Assembly: GCF_001194135.2 (NCBI RefSeq)
Contig: NC_068982.1
Location: 161,497,363 to 161,538,622, forward strand
Direction of reading: 5' to 3'
From: Octopus bimaculoides
Lineage: Eukaryota
Length of the DNA stretch: 41,260 nt
Part shown: piece after piece, positions 3,483-33,267 of the stretch
Numbering within the stretch: the stretch's first letter is position 1
Layout of the letters: each line of letters opens with the position of its first letter
The notes under the pieces: generated by a model
Seen by the model: only the letters and a program-made list of their open reading frames with translations
Databases searched by the model: none
What the model was told of the DNA's origin: nothing
Translations under genes and position numbers: made by a program

Positions 3483-3622
3483 CTATAACGTTGGTAATCT
3501 CCATCATCTTTTTCTTTGTCTGATAGTTGGTTAGGACAGGCATTGTTTCCAAGAAGACTGAGGTATTTTAAGTTAGTGTAAGATGCTTTTAATTTTAAAA
3601 GAAAACTTTCTAAATCAGAAAT
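3483..3622 (-). CDS. LRMDA: LRMDA-like coding exon 4 ([46 protein letters not shown] + AG)
   Basis: Acceptor tttccttaacttcaactag| and donor |gtaagt; 140 nt, phase 0 to 2. [23 protein letters not shown] matches human YLSLLGNVACPNEL..EKDEEDYKRYR (LRR-cap region). Confidence 0.95.
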
Positions 3623-3822
3623 CTAGTTGAAGTTAAGGAAATTTTACAAAAAGGTGGCCCCATATAATATTAGGTAAGTGAAGATTAACATAGAGTAGTG
3701 AAATCATAATAAATTTTAGTGAACTGAAAATCATTAATATTGATGATAATTATTGTTAAGAGGGGAAAGGGAAAGAACTCTGAGATTTAAATTTATTAGA
3801 AATTAATTGGAAGTATTGGCCT

Positions 3823-4132
3823 CCGTAGGATTTTCGAGCGAGATCATTGCCAGTGCCCCTGGACTGGCTTGTGCGGATGGCACATAAAAGACACCATTTC
3901 GAGCGTGGCCGTTGCCAGTATCGCCTGACTGGCCTTCGTGCAGGTGACACGTAAAAGCACCTACTACACTCTCTGAGTGGTTGGCGTTAGGAAGGGCATC
4001 CAGCTGTAGAAACTCTGCCAAATTTAGATTGGAGCCTGGTGTTGCCATCCGGTTTCACCAGTCCTCAGTCAAATCGTCCAACCCATGCTAGCATGGAAAG
4101 CGGACGTTAAATGATGATGATGATGATGATGA
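3823..4132 (+). mobile_element. Young 5'-truncated RTE LINE 3' UTR with (GAT)n tail
   Basis: Nearly identical to sequence downstream of the RTE ORF in the 37454-38462 copy and to 29052-29133; CpGs retained; tail ttaaa(tga)n. Confidence 0.8.
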
Positions 4133-4461
4133 CAGTTGTGAGTGATTCTTACCTTTACTAGTTATGGTGGCAAATTTGGACAAATTTCAATCTTATTAAC
4201 AAGTCCTTAACAAGTCTAATATGTAACTACTAGATTTTAGAATGATTTTGAGAGGATGTGATACCTTTGAATGAAAATTATTTAAAGATTAGTCAATTCA
4301 AAATAATGACGCTCTCAAGGAATGCTTCAAATGATATATATTTGCTGTATCACTAGACACACTAATATACACTCTGTGTGTGTACAGGATAATTCACATA
4401 TTACTATTAATATCATTATATTAATGATATTAATATCATTAATATCATATTTGTTTCTTAA

Positions 4462-4660
4462 AGGAGTGAGCTGGTAGAATCATTAGCACACTGGACAAAA
4501 TGTTTAGCAGTATTTCATTGGTCTTTACATTCAAATTCTGCTGAGGTTGACTTTGCCTTTCAGGGTTGATAAATTAAATACCAGTCAAACATTGGGGGTC
4601 AATGTAATTGACTTACCCCTTTCTTCAAATTGCTGGACTTGTGTTAAAATTTGAAACTAT
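4462..4660 (+). mobile_element. tRNA-type SINE family B, older copy
   Basis: ggagtgagctggtagaatcattagcaca..ttcaaattctgctgaggttgactttgcc..taccagtc.. parallels 4709-4925. Confidence 0.7.
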
Positions 4661-4708
4661 TTTGTATTAGTTTCTTAATATATATTATTATTGTTACTAT
4701 TCATAATA

Positions 4709-4925
4709 AGGTGGTGAGCTGGCAAAATCGTTAGCACAACAGGCGAAATGCTTAGCAGTATTTCGACTGACACTACGTTCTGAGTTAAAATTCTGCCGAG
4801 GTCAACTTTGCCTTTCATCCTCTTGGGGTCGATAAACTAAGTACCAGTTACACACTGGAGGTTGATGTAGTCAACTATCCTCCTCCCCCAAATTTCAGGC
4901 TTTGTGCCTATAGTAGAAAGGATTA
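4709..4925 (+). mobile_element. tRNA-type SINE family B with 15-bp target-site duplication
   Basis: A-box-like tggcaaaatcgttag and B-box-like gttctgagttaaaattc; flanked by identical TTACTATTCATAATA at 4694-4708 and 4926-4940. Confidence 0.8.
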
Positions 4926-5407
4926 TTACTATTCATAATAGTTGTTTTGATGCAAGCATTCTGTAGTATAATTAGTTATGCAATCACTGGCCAAGAGACA
5001 GATATGCTATTTAAGTTCTGTTAGTAGGTATTTCTCTTTTATTATGAACCATTACCAGAGCATCTTTGTGGTTGTTCAGCCTGCTTAAATATATCATTCA
5101 AAATCTCACAAAACTTAAAAAATAGAAGGATACATTGGATAATGTAGTTTTCAATAAACACTAAGTTAGCATGATCATGACTGGAATATCTTTCATTATT
5201 GGTATGCTCAGTTAGAGCCAATATGAAGCTATACCACAAAGTCAGCAACATCTGCTGTATCTTATTATCTGGAATTGTTTGGGTCATTGTAATATCATTT
5301 ATTTATACACACACACATATATAAAAGTCTTAATCTAGAATTGTGTAAGCTTCCAGTTTTCATATTCTAGACATCTCTATTTCTAAGTTCTTATTAGATA
5401 GTTTCTA

Positions 5408-30270: not shown

Positions 30271-30365
30271 ATCACTGGATTTTGGCTGAGAATAGTTCTA
30301 TTGAAAATTCTATTTCTTTAATATATCTAATTACACATATTTTTTTGTTGTTATATATTTTTCAG

Positions 30366-30980
30366 TTAATATTGACATTATTACCCAGAAACGAAATCGA
30401 AAATAAAATAGTGCAGTAGGTGTAACAAAAGGTGAAGGAAACGAATATGAAAACAAAAATTCCGGGAAAGCAACGGTGAGTGGTGGATGGAGAAAAGCCT
30501 TNNNNNNNNNNNNNNNNNNNNNNNNNNNNNNNNNNNNNNNNNNNNNNNNNNNNNNNNNNNNNNNNNNNNNNNNNNNNNNNNNNNNNNNNNNNNNNNNNNN
30601 NNNNNNNNNNNNNNNNNNNNNNNNNNNNNNNNNNNNNNNNNNNNNNNNNNNNNNNNNNNNNNNNNNNNNNNNNNNNNNNNNNNTACGATTATAAAGAAAT
30701 TTGTGGGGGAAATCTTTTCCGAGGGGGTGAGGAGAGGATTTCGAAAAATTCACAAAGATCCAATGTTTTTTCCTCGTAACTTTGAGGAAAATGGATATCT
30801 TTCTACTTCACACCCACGTAGGAAACGAATCTGAAAACAAAAATGCATGGAAAGCAACGGGGGTGGGAGAGGACTTCGGAAAATTCACAAGATCCGAATT
30901 GTTCCCTCGCAACTTTGAGGAAAATATATTCCTTTTGAAATCACAAATTAGGCAGGCAGACAGACAGACAGACAGACAGA

Positions 30981-31014
<34 letters not shown>

Positions 31015-31286
31015 GTAGAAGTAAGGACCCGAACCCTTCAAAGAGATATTTAGCATCTAAGTTCCTGAGGAAAAGCCTAATTTGTGATTTCAAAAAGATT
31101 ATATTTTCCTCAAAGTTACGAGGGAAAAACTCAGATCTTGTTAATCTTGTGAATTTTCCGAAGGTCTTTCTCCGCCCCCACCCCCGTTGCTTTCCTGGAA
31201 TTTTTGTTTTCATATTCGTTTCCTACACCTACACGTTGCCCTATTTTATTTTCGATTTTGTTTCCGGGTAATAATGTCAACATTAA
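30366..31286. repeat. Foldback structure of a 110-130-bp modular repeat around (CAGA)n/(TG)n/(TA)n
   Basis: Outer arms 30366-30500 and 31170-31286 and inner arms 30819-30953 and 31075-31225 are reverse complements; the module recurs in tandem at 30720-30800. Confidence 0.8.
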
Positions 31287-31381
31287 CCATTTTTTTCTAT
31301 TTAATATCTTTGTCAGTCCTTATATTCTTATTCTGTTCTCTTTACACTATATATAAGCATACGTACACAAGTGTAACATCC

Positions 31382-31758
31382 CCACCAACTTTGTTTCCTC
31401 AAAACTTTCAGAAAACTGGATACTACAAATTTCCCAAAATTTCAAGTTTCATATTGCAGATATATATGTAATGTATGTAATTTTGTATGTATGTGTGCCC
31501 ACCAATTTTTGTCTTACATTACATTTCGATATTATCGTAATCTACACGTCAGAAAGGTATTTGTAGAAAATTTTATTTAAAAAATACTCATTTTTCTGAA
31601 AGTTACGAGGAAACAAAATCGATTTTCAGAAACTTATGTCCTTCATCCAAGGAAAAAAAACTTTCGCAACAAATTTCAACATAACTGGAATCTACTCGAA
31701 GAAAATTTCATTACAAAATATTCAGTTTTCTAAAAGTTACGAAGAACAAATTTGGTGG
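31382..31758. repeat. Second inverted-repeat element (about 38-bp arms) sharing the aagttacgagg motif
   Basis: ccaccaactttgtttcctcaaaactttcagaaaactgga (31382-31420) pairs with ttcagttttctaaaagttacgaagaacaaatttggtgg (31721-31758). Confidence 0.65.
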
Positions 31759-33177
31759 TGGTGGTGGTGGGGCACACTTGTGTAGGTGTGTACATGTGTG
31801 TGTGCGTGTGTACAATGGAGCAATGTTGGAAATAGAGAGGATATGTTGGGGTACGACGTATACCTACTTCTCAGTTTCTGGATTTTATTCGTTCATTATC
31901 TATTATTATTATCCTTTGTCAAGTTTCTATTATTCAGTTATCATAATAAAACACATAAAAAAGATTAATTTATAATACTTTAAGAGAAGTTCAGTATTCT
32001 AGCTGGAACAATGGAAATTAAGGGATTGGAGTGTCCGCAGGATGATTTTGTGAAGGATGAAGTAAGGTATTTGATATACCTGTATTTATCTATGTTACAT
32101 GAAGTTCAGGATTTAGGACAAATGAGGCCCTATGCTAATTAAGTTATGATACATGCTCAGGAAATTCATCTTATTTTGGACGGGAAGATGCCCCCCCCCC
32201 ACTCAAACACCTGGTGAAACGGGGCTGTGTGCTTAAGTACAATGGTAAATCCGGCACTGGTTACATATAAAGTACATGTCACTGGCCGCTCCGAGTTATT
32301 TCTCTTCATTTTTGTTTAAATTACAGTAAGGATACTGAACAAAAGAAATTTTCAATGTAAACAAACTTATTCACAATGCGAACTTCTACTTTTCCGACTC
32401 ATTGTAGTTGTGTTTACGTAATAATAGGATAAAATCTGCAATAAGTCAGTGACTACATTTCGTCACTTTTAAATTCGATACATCAAAATTACTGGTAAAG
32501 TACAACTCAACAGGTAGTCAGTGTTATGTGTGTGTGTCTGTATTTAGGCAGACAGGTATGTATGTATGTATGTATGTATGTAACATACGTACGTAAACGT
32601 GACGTTTATTTTCTCACAAGATGAAAAACAACAATAAAAGTTAAAGAAATGGGGGGGGGAAGCTGTTTTAGCAAATGCCTTCTACAATAAACTTCGTCAA
32701 CACAAAAGCTTGTCAGTGAAATTGGGCGGACAGAAATTGTGAGAAAGTTAGCACGATGAACTGTAATTGAAAGGGCTAACCTTGTCATACACTATCACAC
32801 TAATTCTGACTGAAGATTGAGTTTAGAGTACAAAGTGTCAATGAAATACTTAGTGTCAATAAAGTACACGAGCAATTTAGTTGATTGAACGACTAGAATA
32901 TGGAATATCGACTTTAATAACAATTAGATCCAGGCCAGCCTGGATTCTGCCGACCTATGATCAAAGGCAGTCTAGTCATGACTAACCCACCTGTTTGAAA
33001 CAGTATATCTTCGTTGCATTATCTAATATACCTTCCTTTATTTTGAAGATGTGACTGTTAATTCTAGCGAGCCATGTAACGGCGAGGAGATCTCTTGTTG
33101 GTTCTTAGTTTATGATGTGTGAAAGAGAGAGAGAGAGAGAGAATTTCCTTAGATAGCGAAAACAAAATGCAGTTTAC

Positions 33178-33267
33178 CTGTCCGTTTGCGAAGACTAAAT
33201 TTTCCTTCTTTTTCTCGTTCTTCTCTCCATTTTGAGGTAAAATAGGTTTTCCTTTGTTAGTCATCAT
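33178..33267 (-). CDS. LRMDA: LRMDA/C10orf11-like protein, coding exon 1 ([30 protein letters not shown])
   Basis: ATG ATG at 33267-33262 with an in-frame upstream TGA at 33318-33316. The 90-nt exon ends CAG|gtaaac (phase 0) and joins exon 2 in frame. [12 protein letters not shown] aligns with human LRMDA AGLVVRGTQ|VSY as I recall it. Confidence 0.8.

What the first reader, a model, noticed from the sequence alone, without database searches (positions are those of the whole stretch)
3483..33267. Hidden spliced LRMDA (OCA7)-like gene across a 24-kb first intron
Seen in sequence: four minus-strand exons of 90, 101, 127 and 140 nt with GT-AG sites and matching phases (0, 2, 0, 2) encode [152 protein letters not shown](R). 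Established knowledge: this LRR + LRR-cap layout matches human LRMDA/C10orf11. The ORF track reports none of exons 2-4 in the right frame.
Basis: partly seen in the sequence, partly recalled or inferred. Interest (0 to 1): 0.7.

Follow-up and report, generated by a model that had tools for sequence, protein, structure and literature searches.

The report
Octopus LRMDA gene, first four exons

Summary
Four minus-strand exons (33267-33178, 8881-8781, 7831-7705, 3622-3483) have GT-AG borders and compatible phases, and they give the stated 152-residue peptide.

The peptide is 52% identical, without gaps, to primate LRMDA (E 1e-40). Every named hit among the 120 listed is LRMDA, C10orf11 or a generic name, whereas U2A' reaches only 23 bits.

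The gene is not hidden. The window is a 0-mismatch copy of O. bimaculoides chromosome CM046602.1, and NCBI already lists a 100% identical 153-aa protein named LRMDA over the same span.

What I add: that public model is truncated. Its last codon and stop (AGG TAA) are read through the exon-4 donor into intron 4. The gapless O. sinensis orthologue (242 aa) has three more exons. In O. bimaculoides, exon 5 falls in a 1184-N gap just beyond window position 1, and exon 6 is intact 4.6 kb further on.

The five gaps named in the finding all lie in intron 1, which is collinear with O. sinensis, so they do not affect the reading frame.

The inferred function is a RAB32-to-Commander/Retriever adaptor.

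Novelty: already known. Interest: low.

The parts
33178..33267 (-). Coding exon 1 (90 nt, phase 0 at its end): start codon plus a poorly conserved lysine-rich N-terminus, ending in the conserved VFANGQ.
   Evidence: It is 87/90 nt identical to O. sinensis, with no indels and the same donor. It forms the first strand of the N-terminal cap hairpin in the model.
8882..33177 (-). Intron 1 (24,296 nt as assembled). It contains the five assembly gaps named in the finding, retroelement fragments and microsatellites. No coding exon of this gene lies in it.
   Evidence: GT...AG borders. Collinear with the gapless O. sinensis intron of 28,388 nt. Repeats.
8781..8881 (-). Coding exon 2 (101 nt): [33 protein letters not shown], which is the N-cap and the first LRR.
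7832..8780 (-). Intron 2 (949 nt). Its position coincides with the point where the human 198-aa and 226-aa isoforms diverge.
   Evidence: alignment.
7705..7831 (-). Coding exon 3 (127 nt): two LRRs ([42 protein letters not shown]).
   Evidence: It is 127/127 nt identical to O. sinensis. Pfam LRR_4 matches at E 1.4e-10.
3623..7704 (-). Intron 3 (4,082 nt).
3483..3622 (-). Coding exon 4 (140 nt): the last LRR and the first part of the U2A'-type LRR cap. It includes the residues equivalent to human Y106, N117 and L119 of the RAB32 interface.
   Evidence: It is 139/140 nt identical to O. sinensis.
3479..3482 (-). G + TAA: the first four bases of intron 4 (donor gtaagt). The public 153-aa model reads them as the end of codon AGG (R153) plus a stop. 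This read-through is an annotation artefact and is not the true 3' end.
   Evidence: The gene range (L001 10001-39789) ends at window 3479. O. sinensis splices here to exon 5.
1..3482 (-). The part of intron 4 that lies in the window; no further exon is present. Homology to O. sinensis runs down to about window 399, roughly 30 nt before the point where exon 5 should begin, and then breaks. Window 1-398 is unrelated sequence. A 263-N gap lies at 1490-1752.

Best explanation
The window holds coding exons 1-4 of the single-copy Octopus bimaculoides orthologue of LRMDA (C10orf11/OCA7). The gene has seven coding exons and is transcribed from the minus strand.

These four exons encode a short variable N-terminus, the N-cap, the leucine-rich repeats and the first half of a U2A'-type LRR cap. 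The gene continues beyond window position 1. Exon 5 (rest of the cap) lies in an assembly gap. Exons 6-7 encode a disordered tail that ends in a conserved ...SEGNR[FY]I[KR]NxDL-COOH.

By inference from the human protein, the LRR/cap domain binds GTP-loaded Rab32/38. The C-terminal tail, with its terminal leucine, docks into the VPS35L:VPS26C pocket of Retriever. The protein would therefore recruit the Commander recycling machinery to Rab32-positive membranes of lysosome-related organelles.

Shown here: exon structure, orthology, fold, conservation of the interface residues, and truncation of the public model.

Inferred: the binding partners and the cellular role in octopus.

The confidence given (0.93) is for the identification of the gene and its structure. 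For the inferred adaptor mechanism in octopus I would give about 0.6.
For: Structure of the gene:
- Exons and splice sites are as described.
- The splice sites are identical in O. sinensis, and the exons have no indels. Exons are 450/458 nt identical against about 92-95% identity, with indels, in the flanks.

Identity of the locus:
- The window is the reverse complement of CM046602.1 (GCA_001194135.2) with 0 mismatches in 41,260 nt.

Orthology:
- A 100% identical protein is named LRMDA [O. bimaculoides]. O. sinensis is 97% identical and Argonauta 87%.
- More distant LRMDAs reach 50-60% identity down to cnidarians and fishes, and no second octopus paralogue is listed.
- The 226-aa Pan LRMDA aligns at 52% identity, E 1e-40, with no gaps. 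The human sequence was verified by exact look-up.

Fold:
- The AlphaFold2 model of the 242-aa O. sinensis orthologue has pLDDT above 90 over residues ~21-190 (lower, ~70, in a loop at about 131-150) and a disordered tail from 191 to 242.
- The nearest solved folds are U2A', dynein LC1, CFAP410-N and ANP32A.

Function:
- In the human protein, Y106D, L119D, F145D and N117K abolish RAB32 binding. L189D, I221A, D223A, G217S and L226G abolish Retriever binding (PMC12491506).
- Y106, N117 and L119 are invariant in the alignment, and the window encodes them.
- F145, L189, G217, I221 and L226 are at least 90% conserved and present in O. sinensis and Argonauta.

Continuation of the gene:
- O. sinensis exons 5, 6 and 7 lie at L002 40709-40835, 44970-45033 and 47132-47211.
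- O. bimaculoides exon 6 is intact, with AG/GT borders, at L001 47880-47943.
- The exon 5 interval corresponds to the gap at L001 43268-44451.
Against: - No transcript evidence could be examined, so the splice junctions rest on sequence signals and comparative protein evidence.
- Exon 5 and exon 7 of O. bimaculoides were not seen. Exon 5 lies in a gap and exon 7 lies beyond the fetched DNA, so an intact full-length gene in this species is inferred from O. sinensis and from the intact exon 6.
- The Retriever motif defined in human cells is [IL]-x-[DE]-x-x-[IL]-COOH. The octopus tail is I-K-N-N-D-L, and the listed fish tail is I-R-N-D-Q-L. Position -3 is therefore Asn and not Asp/Glu, so Retriever binding outside mammals is not guaranteed.
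- Octopuses have no melanocytes, so the organismal role cannot simply be transferred.
Confidence: 0.93

Rival explanations
1. The exons belong to another small LRR-plus-cap family (U2A'/SNRPA1, ANP32, dynein light chain 1, CFAP410) and not to LRMDA.
For: These families are the closest solved structures at fold level. Pfam LRR_9, the U2A'-type model, matches weakly (E 0.0045, below its cut-off).
Against: Sequence scores differ by about 100 bits. Primate LRMDA scores 123 bits at 52% identity, whereas yeast U2A' scores 23 bits and DNAL1 24 bits, and ANP32 is absent from the best 60. Structural alignments show only 21-26% identity. None of the 120 best database hits carries a U2A'/SNRPA1, ANP32 or dynein light chain product name. 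A few UniRef entries are named only after the generic U2A'/phosphoprotein 32 C-terminal (LRR cap) domain. The family-specific tail GKxRYxYYGKHSEGNRFIRNxDL is present in the octopod orthologues.
Confidence: 0.01
2. The 153-aa product is real. Intron 4 is retained or polyadenylated, giving a short protein (LRRs plus half a cap) that ends at R153, either as the only product in O. bimaculoides or as a regulated isoform lacking the Commander-binding tail.
For: The public model ends exactly there. A stop codon follows the donor at once (AG|GTAA). Exon-5-less models also exist in O. vulgaris (193 aa) and in a frog isoform X3.
Against: The same AG|GTAAGT is present in O. sinensis, which is nevertheless modelled with exons 5-7. 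Residue 153 lies in the middle of cap helix 145-159 of a confidently folded domain that extends to about residue 190, so the short product lacks part of its fold. Exon 6 is intact in O. bimaculoides. The missing exon 5 coincides with an assembly gap, which is a sufficient technical explanation.
Confidence: 0.06
3. Exon 2 is normally joined to a different, unseen upstream exon (for example one in an intron-1 gap), and the ATG exon at 33178-33267 is an alternative or spurious first exon.
For: Human LRMDA uses alternative 5' exons, since the 198-aa and 226-aa isoforms differ upstream of RSLEGL. About 1.4 kb of intron 1 is unread.
Against: The exon 1 peptide is conserved in O. sinensis, O. vulgaris and Argonauta. 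Its 3' end encodes the family-wide F-x-NGQ that precedes L[ST]Y of exon 2. Without it the N-cap hairpin (strands 24-27 and 30-33, pLDDT about 95) would be incomplete. The O. sinensis sequence corresponding to the gaps is not part of its coding sequence.
Confidence: 0.05

Closest known systems
Human LRMDA / C10orf11 (OCA7 gene; UniProt Q9H2I8 and the 226-aa isoform A0A087WWI0)
   Same: - 52% identity without gaps over the LRR domain.
- Same architecture: N-cap, LRRs, U2A'-type cap and a disordered tail ending in a terminal Leu.
- RAB32-interface residues Y106, N117 and L119 are invariant (PMC12491506).
- At least two intron positions appear to be shared. The human isoforms diverge at the octopus exon 2/3 junction, and the frog X3 isoform diverges at the exon 4/5 junction.
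   Different: - The octopus protein has a longer, lysine-rich N-terminus of about 22 residues.
- The tail motif is IKNNDL and not IRDDQL.
- The organism has no melanocytes.
- The window holds only exons 1-4.
LRMDA of Octopus sinensis (242 aa), O. vulgaris (193 aa) and Argonauta hians (240 aa), as annotated by NCBI
   Same: 97%, 97% and 87% identity respectively. O. sinensis has identical splice sites and a similarly long first intron of 28.4 kb.
   Different: O. sinensis and Argonauta models are full length. The O. bimaculoides model stops at R153, and the O. vulgaris model skips exon 5 and reads exons 6-7 out of frame.
U2A' (SNRPA1), ANP32A, dynein light chain 1, CFAP410 N-domain
   Same: They share the fold: a short SDS22-like LRR solenoid with a helical LRR cap (target-normalised TM-score up to 0.73).
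   Different: Only 21-26% identity, with sequence scores of 24 bits or less. They have different tails and different partners (U2B''/U2 snRNA, histones, dynein).
SNX17 / SNX31 C-terminal Retriever-binding motif
   Same: The octopod orthologues end in I-x-x-x-x-L-COOH, like SNX17 IGDEDL and LRMDA IRDDQL (PMC12491506).
   Different: The motif lies outside the window (exon 7). Position -3 is Asn in octopus, and the rest of the protein is unrelated to sorting nexins.

Membership tests
LRMDA (C10orf11/OCA7) orthologous group | Closest sequence relatives are LRMDA proteins, including the human one, and not other LRR families. | tested here: met
   The specifically named proteins among the 120 best hits are all LRMDA/C10orf11. 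The 226-aa Pan isoform aligns at 52% identity, E 1e-40. The human sequence was verified by exact look-up. U2A' reaches only 23 bits.
LRMDA (C10orf11/OCA7) orthologous group | N-terminal LRR domain with a U2A'-type cap. | tested here: met
   Pfam LRR_4 matches above its cut-off, while LRR_9 is weak. The AlphaFold model of the 97%-identical orthologue is confident over residues 21-190, and its nearest folds are U2A' and LC1. The window encodes the domain only up to the middle of cap helix 145-159.
LRMDA (C10orf11/OCA7) orthologous group | RAB32-contact residues (human Y106, N117, L119, F145). | tested here: met
   Y106, N117 and L119 are invariant in the alignment and are encoded by window exon 4 ([16 protein letters not shown]). 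F145 (LKFLD) lies in exon 5; it is present in O. sinensis and Argonauta but unread in O. bimaculoides (PMC12491506).
LRMDA (C10orf11/OCA7) orthologous group | Disordered C-terminal tail ending in the Retriever-binding motif with a terminal Leu. | tested here: inconclusive
   The tail is not in the window. O. sinensis and Argonauta end in ...GRHSEGNRYI[KR]N[NH]DL, keeping the equivalents of I221 and L226. Position -3 is N, which departs from the human-derived motif [DE].
LRMDA (C10orf11/OCA7) orthologous group | Physical binding to GTP-Rab32/38 and to VPS35L:VPS26C, and a role in pigment-organelle biogenesis. | not testable with these tools
   This needs biochemistry or genetics. It has been shown only for the human protein (PMC12491506, PMC9703636).
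U2A' / SNRPA1 | Sequence membership of the U2A' family. | tested here: not met
   23 bits (E 5e-4) to yeast U2A', and human U2A' is not among the best 60 PDB sequence hits. Identity is 21-26% in structural alignments.
ANP32 (pp32) | LRR domain followed by a long acidic tail. | tested here: not met
   ANP32 is absent from the best 60 sequence hits. The tail of the octopod orthologues is not acidic and carries the LRMDA motif. Fold similarity is weaker than to U2A'.

The most novel reading that the evidence does not exclude
Octopus LRMDA works as a Rab32-to-Commander adaptor in the biogenesis of cephalopod pigment organelles (ommochrome granules of chromatophores and/or ink-gland melanosomes). 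The OCA7 pathway would then be an ancient module for lysosome-related organelles that predates melanocytes. A weaker variant is that intron-4 read-through gives a natural tail-less 153-aa isoform that binds Rab32 but not Commander.
Probability: 0.3. Interest if true: 0.35.

Novelty: already known. Interest (0 to 1): 0.08.

Why it matters
As a discovery it matters little. The gene, its name and these exact exons are already in the public annotation of Octopus bimaculoides, and the family is annotated across Metazoa.

Two modest points of use remain.

- The public O. bimaculoides protein (153 aa) is a truncated model caused by an assembly gap that hides exon 5. Anyone using it, for instance in pigmentation-gene surveys of cephalopods, should use the 242-aa O. 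sinensis form as a guide.
- The RAB32-contact residues and the C-terminal tail are conserved in animals without melanocytes. This fits the 2025 finding that LRMDA is a general Rab32-Commander adaptor and not a melanocyte-specific factor.

Tried and rejected
- I searched the window for the remaining exons with the O. sinensis C-terminal 89 residues (tblastn). Nothing was found in window 1-3482. The gap at 1490-1752 was considered as the hiding place of exon 5 but rejected, because DNA collinearity with O. sinensis continues past it down to window ~399.
- dN/dS between O. bimaculoides and O. sinensis is uninformative, with only 8 differing codons (3 synonymous, 5 non-synonymous). The species are too close.
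- Pfam scans of ORF fragments in intron 1 and upstream gave no significant family. Their retroelement nature rests on repetition within the window and on a GLKVNLAKTKVL-type motif that I recognise from memory as the tail of the reverse-transcriptase domain of non-LTR elements. It is not established by a database hit.
- Rfam and tRNA scans of the whole window found nothing.
- A literature search for LRMDA together with cephalopods found nothing.
- The PDB holds no LRMDA structure.
- Their presence is assumed from general knowledge of metazoan conservation.

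
Full report
**1. The observation**

I read the four claimed exons on the minus strand and spliced them by script.

| Exon | Window coordinates | Length | Borders |
|---|---|---|---|
| 1 | 33267-33178 | 90 nt | first ATG in frame after a stop; donor gtaaac |
| 2 | 8881-8781 | 101 nt | acceptor ctacag; donor gtaagt |
| 3 | 7831-7705 | 127 nt | acceptor tttcag; donor gtatcc |
| 4 | 3622-3483 | 140 nt | acceptor aactag; donor gtaagt |

Introns 1-3 are 24,296, 949 and 4,082 nt long.

Exons 2-4 sit in stop-to-stop frames of 46, 64 and 47 codons. Start-codon ORFs there are 33, 47 and 0 aa.

**2. Assembly gaps**

The window has nine N runs. The five named in the finding all lie inside intron 1 and touch neither an exon nor a splice site.

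I compared intron 1 with the orthologous locus of Octopus sinensis, which has no N at all. The aligned blocks (17.2 kb, about 77-94% identity) follow one another in the same order and orientation across each of the five gaps. The O. sinensis intron is 28,388 nt long.

The proteins of O. sinensis, O. vulgaris and Argonauta hians pass from the exon 1 peptide to the exon 2 peptide without any inserted residues. The gaps therefore affect only the stated intron length and not the frame or the exon set.

**3. Where the window comes from, and what is already annotated**

The peptide has a 100% identical database entry of 153 aa. [quoted passage not shown]

The contig that carries it is chromosome CM046602.1 of assembly GCA_001194135.2. 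The window is its reverse-complemented copy relative to locus L001, with 0 mismatches in 41,260 bases.

The gene is therefore not hidden.

**4. Orthology**

The next hits are LRMDA of O. sinensis (97%), O. vulgaris (97%) and Argonauta (87%). After them come LRMDA or C10orf11-like proteins of gastropods, bivalves, an annelid, insects, cnidarians, fishes and a frog, at 48-66% identity. No second octopus protein and no other named LRR family appear among the 120 best hits. A few UniRef entries carry only the generic name of the U2A'/phosphoprotein 32 C-terminal (LRR cap) domain.

An exact-sequence look-up confirmed it as NP_114413.1 / Q9H2I8. The 226-aa primate isoform from the same cluster aligns with the window's protein at 52% identity over 131 residues without a gap, E 1e-40.

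U2A' scores 23 bits and DNAL1 24 bits, and ANP32 is not among the 60 best PDB sequence hits.

**5. Fold**

Pfam finds LRR_4 above its cut-off, and LRR_8 and LRR_9 below theirs.

I ran an AlphaFold2 model of the full-length O. sinensis orthologue with a 42-sequence alignment. The mean pLDDT is 81. Residues ~21-190 are mostly above 90, with a lower-confidence loop at about residues 131-150, and the tail 191-242 is disordered.

Its nearest solved structures are U2A' (target-normalised TM-score about 0.7), dynein light chain 1, the CFAP410 N-domain and ANP32A, at 21-26% identity. The PDB contains no LRMDA structure.

Exon 1 contributes strand 24-27 of an N-terminal hairpin whose partner strand 30-33 is encoded by exon 2. 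This is independent support for joining the two exons across the long intron.

**6. The gene is longer than the finding, and the public model is truncated**

The 153rd residue and the stop codon of the public model are AGG TAA. These are the last two bases of exon 4 plus the first four bases of the donor gtaagt. The model simply reads into intron 4.

O. sinensis has the same donor sequence but continues with three more exons:

- Exon 5: L002 40709-40835, 127 nt, encoding YYVIYELKTLKFLD...ARPIEST.
- Exon 6: L002 44970-45033.
- Exon 7: L002 47132-47211, ending ...GRHSEGNRYIKNNDL.

None of these exons is in the window. DNA collinearity between the two species runs through intron 4 down to window ~399, which is about 30 nt before exon 5 should start. 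It then breaks. Window 1-398 is unrelated sequence.

A 1184-N gap follows immediately beyond window position 1 (L001 43268-44451). Homology resumes 47 nt after that gap, at a point 120 nt downstream of exon 5. Exon 5 therefore falls in the unread stretch.

Exon 6 of O. bimaculoides is intact with AG/GT borders at L001 47880-47943. Exon 7 would lie just beyond the DNA I could fetch.

Residue 153 lies inside cap helix 145-159 of the model. The 153-aa product would therefore lack part of its folded domain and the whole tail. The most economical reading is an annotation artefact of the gap and not a genuine short protein.

**7. How it most likely works (inferred)**

A 2025 study showed the following for human LRMDA (PMC12491506):

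- It binds active RAB32 through its LRR domain. The mutants Y106D, L119D, F145D and the patient mutation N117K lose RAB32 binding.
- It binds the Retriever part of Commander through its disordered tail and terminal leucine. L189D, I221A, D223A, G217S and L226G, as well as C-terminal tagging, abolish this binding.
- Both contacts are needed for pigmentation.

An earlier study placed the protein on melanosome membranes with Rab32/38 (PMC9703636, abstract).

In my alignment, Y106, N117 and L119 are invariant, and window exon 4 encodes them. F145, L189, Y208, G217, I221 and L226 are at least 90% conserved and present in the octopod full-length proteins.

I therefore infer the same adaptor mechanism in octopus. 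One caveat applies: position -3 of the tail is Asn in octopus (and in the listed fish), whereas the human-derived motif has Asp/Glu at that position.

The family is conserved in insects and cnidarians. This argues for a general role in Rab32-dependent organelles and not a melanocyte-specific one. A role in cephalopod pigment granules is plausible but untested.

**8. Verdict**

Novelty is nil, because the gene is already annotated as LRMDA in this species and its relatives. The only addition is the diagnosis that the public 153-aa model is truncated by an assembly gap that hides exon 5. Interest is low.

Noticed in passing
window 3479-3482 (minus strand): The public 153-aa O. bimaculoides LRMDA model ends with AGG TAA, which is read through the exon-4 donor (AG|gtaagt). 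It is a truncated model and not a natural stop.
   Followed up: yes
window 1-398, and L001 43268-44451 (just outside the window): Homology with O. sinensis intron 4 stops about 30 nt before exon 5. About 400 nt of unrelated sequence follow, then a 1184-N gap. Exon 5 of LRMDA is missing from the assembly. Only a 25-40 nt piece of the inserted sequence recurs elsewhere.
   Followed up: partly
P0003 (O. vulgaris, 193 aa) and P0106 (Pelobates fuscus isoform X3, 191 aa); L002 44971-45078 and 47132-47191: Both models leave the LRMDA frame exactly after ...DYQRYR, which is the octopus exon 4/5 junction. The O. vulgaris tail is exons 6-7 read in a shifted frame, meaning exon 5 is skipped or missing. 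This suggests either a recurrent exon-5-skipping isoform or a recurrent assembly problem, and a conserved intron position in vertebrates.
   Followed up: partly
alignment A1, octopus exon 2/3 junction at window 8781/7831: The human 198-aa and 226-aa LRMDA isoforms diverge immediately upstream of RSLEGL. This aligns with the octopus exon 2/3 boundary, which points to an intron position shared between human and octopus.
   Followed up: no
window 14426-14884 (-), 39743-40102 (-), 18503-18862 (+), 37611-38411 (-), 36778-37146 (+), 3879-4132: Dispersed repeats at 71-89% identity to one another carry open fragments such as GLKVNLAKTKVL...CxxC...GEKLEIVDSFCYLG and RRLRWYGHVVRMDEDSCVKKC...GRGRPRKTW. 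From memory these look like the C-terminal parts of non-LTR retrotransposon reverse transcriptases. Pfam gave no significant hit.
   Followed up: partly
window 1490-1752, 19853-20201, 28572-29051, 34106-34472: These four assembly gaps are flanked by TA/TG-type simple repeats, since the translations across the gaps read YIYIYI, HTHTHT or CVCVCV next to the N run. The gaps probably mark unresolvable microsatellites.
   Followed up: no
window 12375-12461, 27756-27836, 17904-18000, 40961-41260, 39003-39189: Long microsatellites: (GA)43, (AG)40, (TG)n of about 97 nt and a 300-nt AT-rich array that runs to the window end. There is also a 66-nt tandem repeat of about 2.8 copies.
   Followed up: no
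L002 1-1144 (-): In O. sinensis the gene called upstream of LRMDA encodes a 281-aa product with a DUF7041 domain. No counterpart was looked for in the window upstream of exon 1 (33268-41260), which consists largely of repeats and gaps.
   Followed up: no
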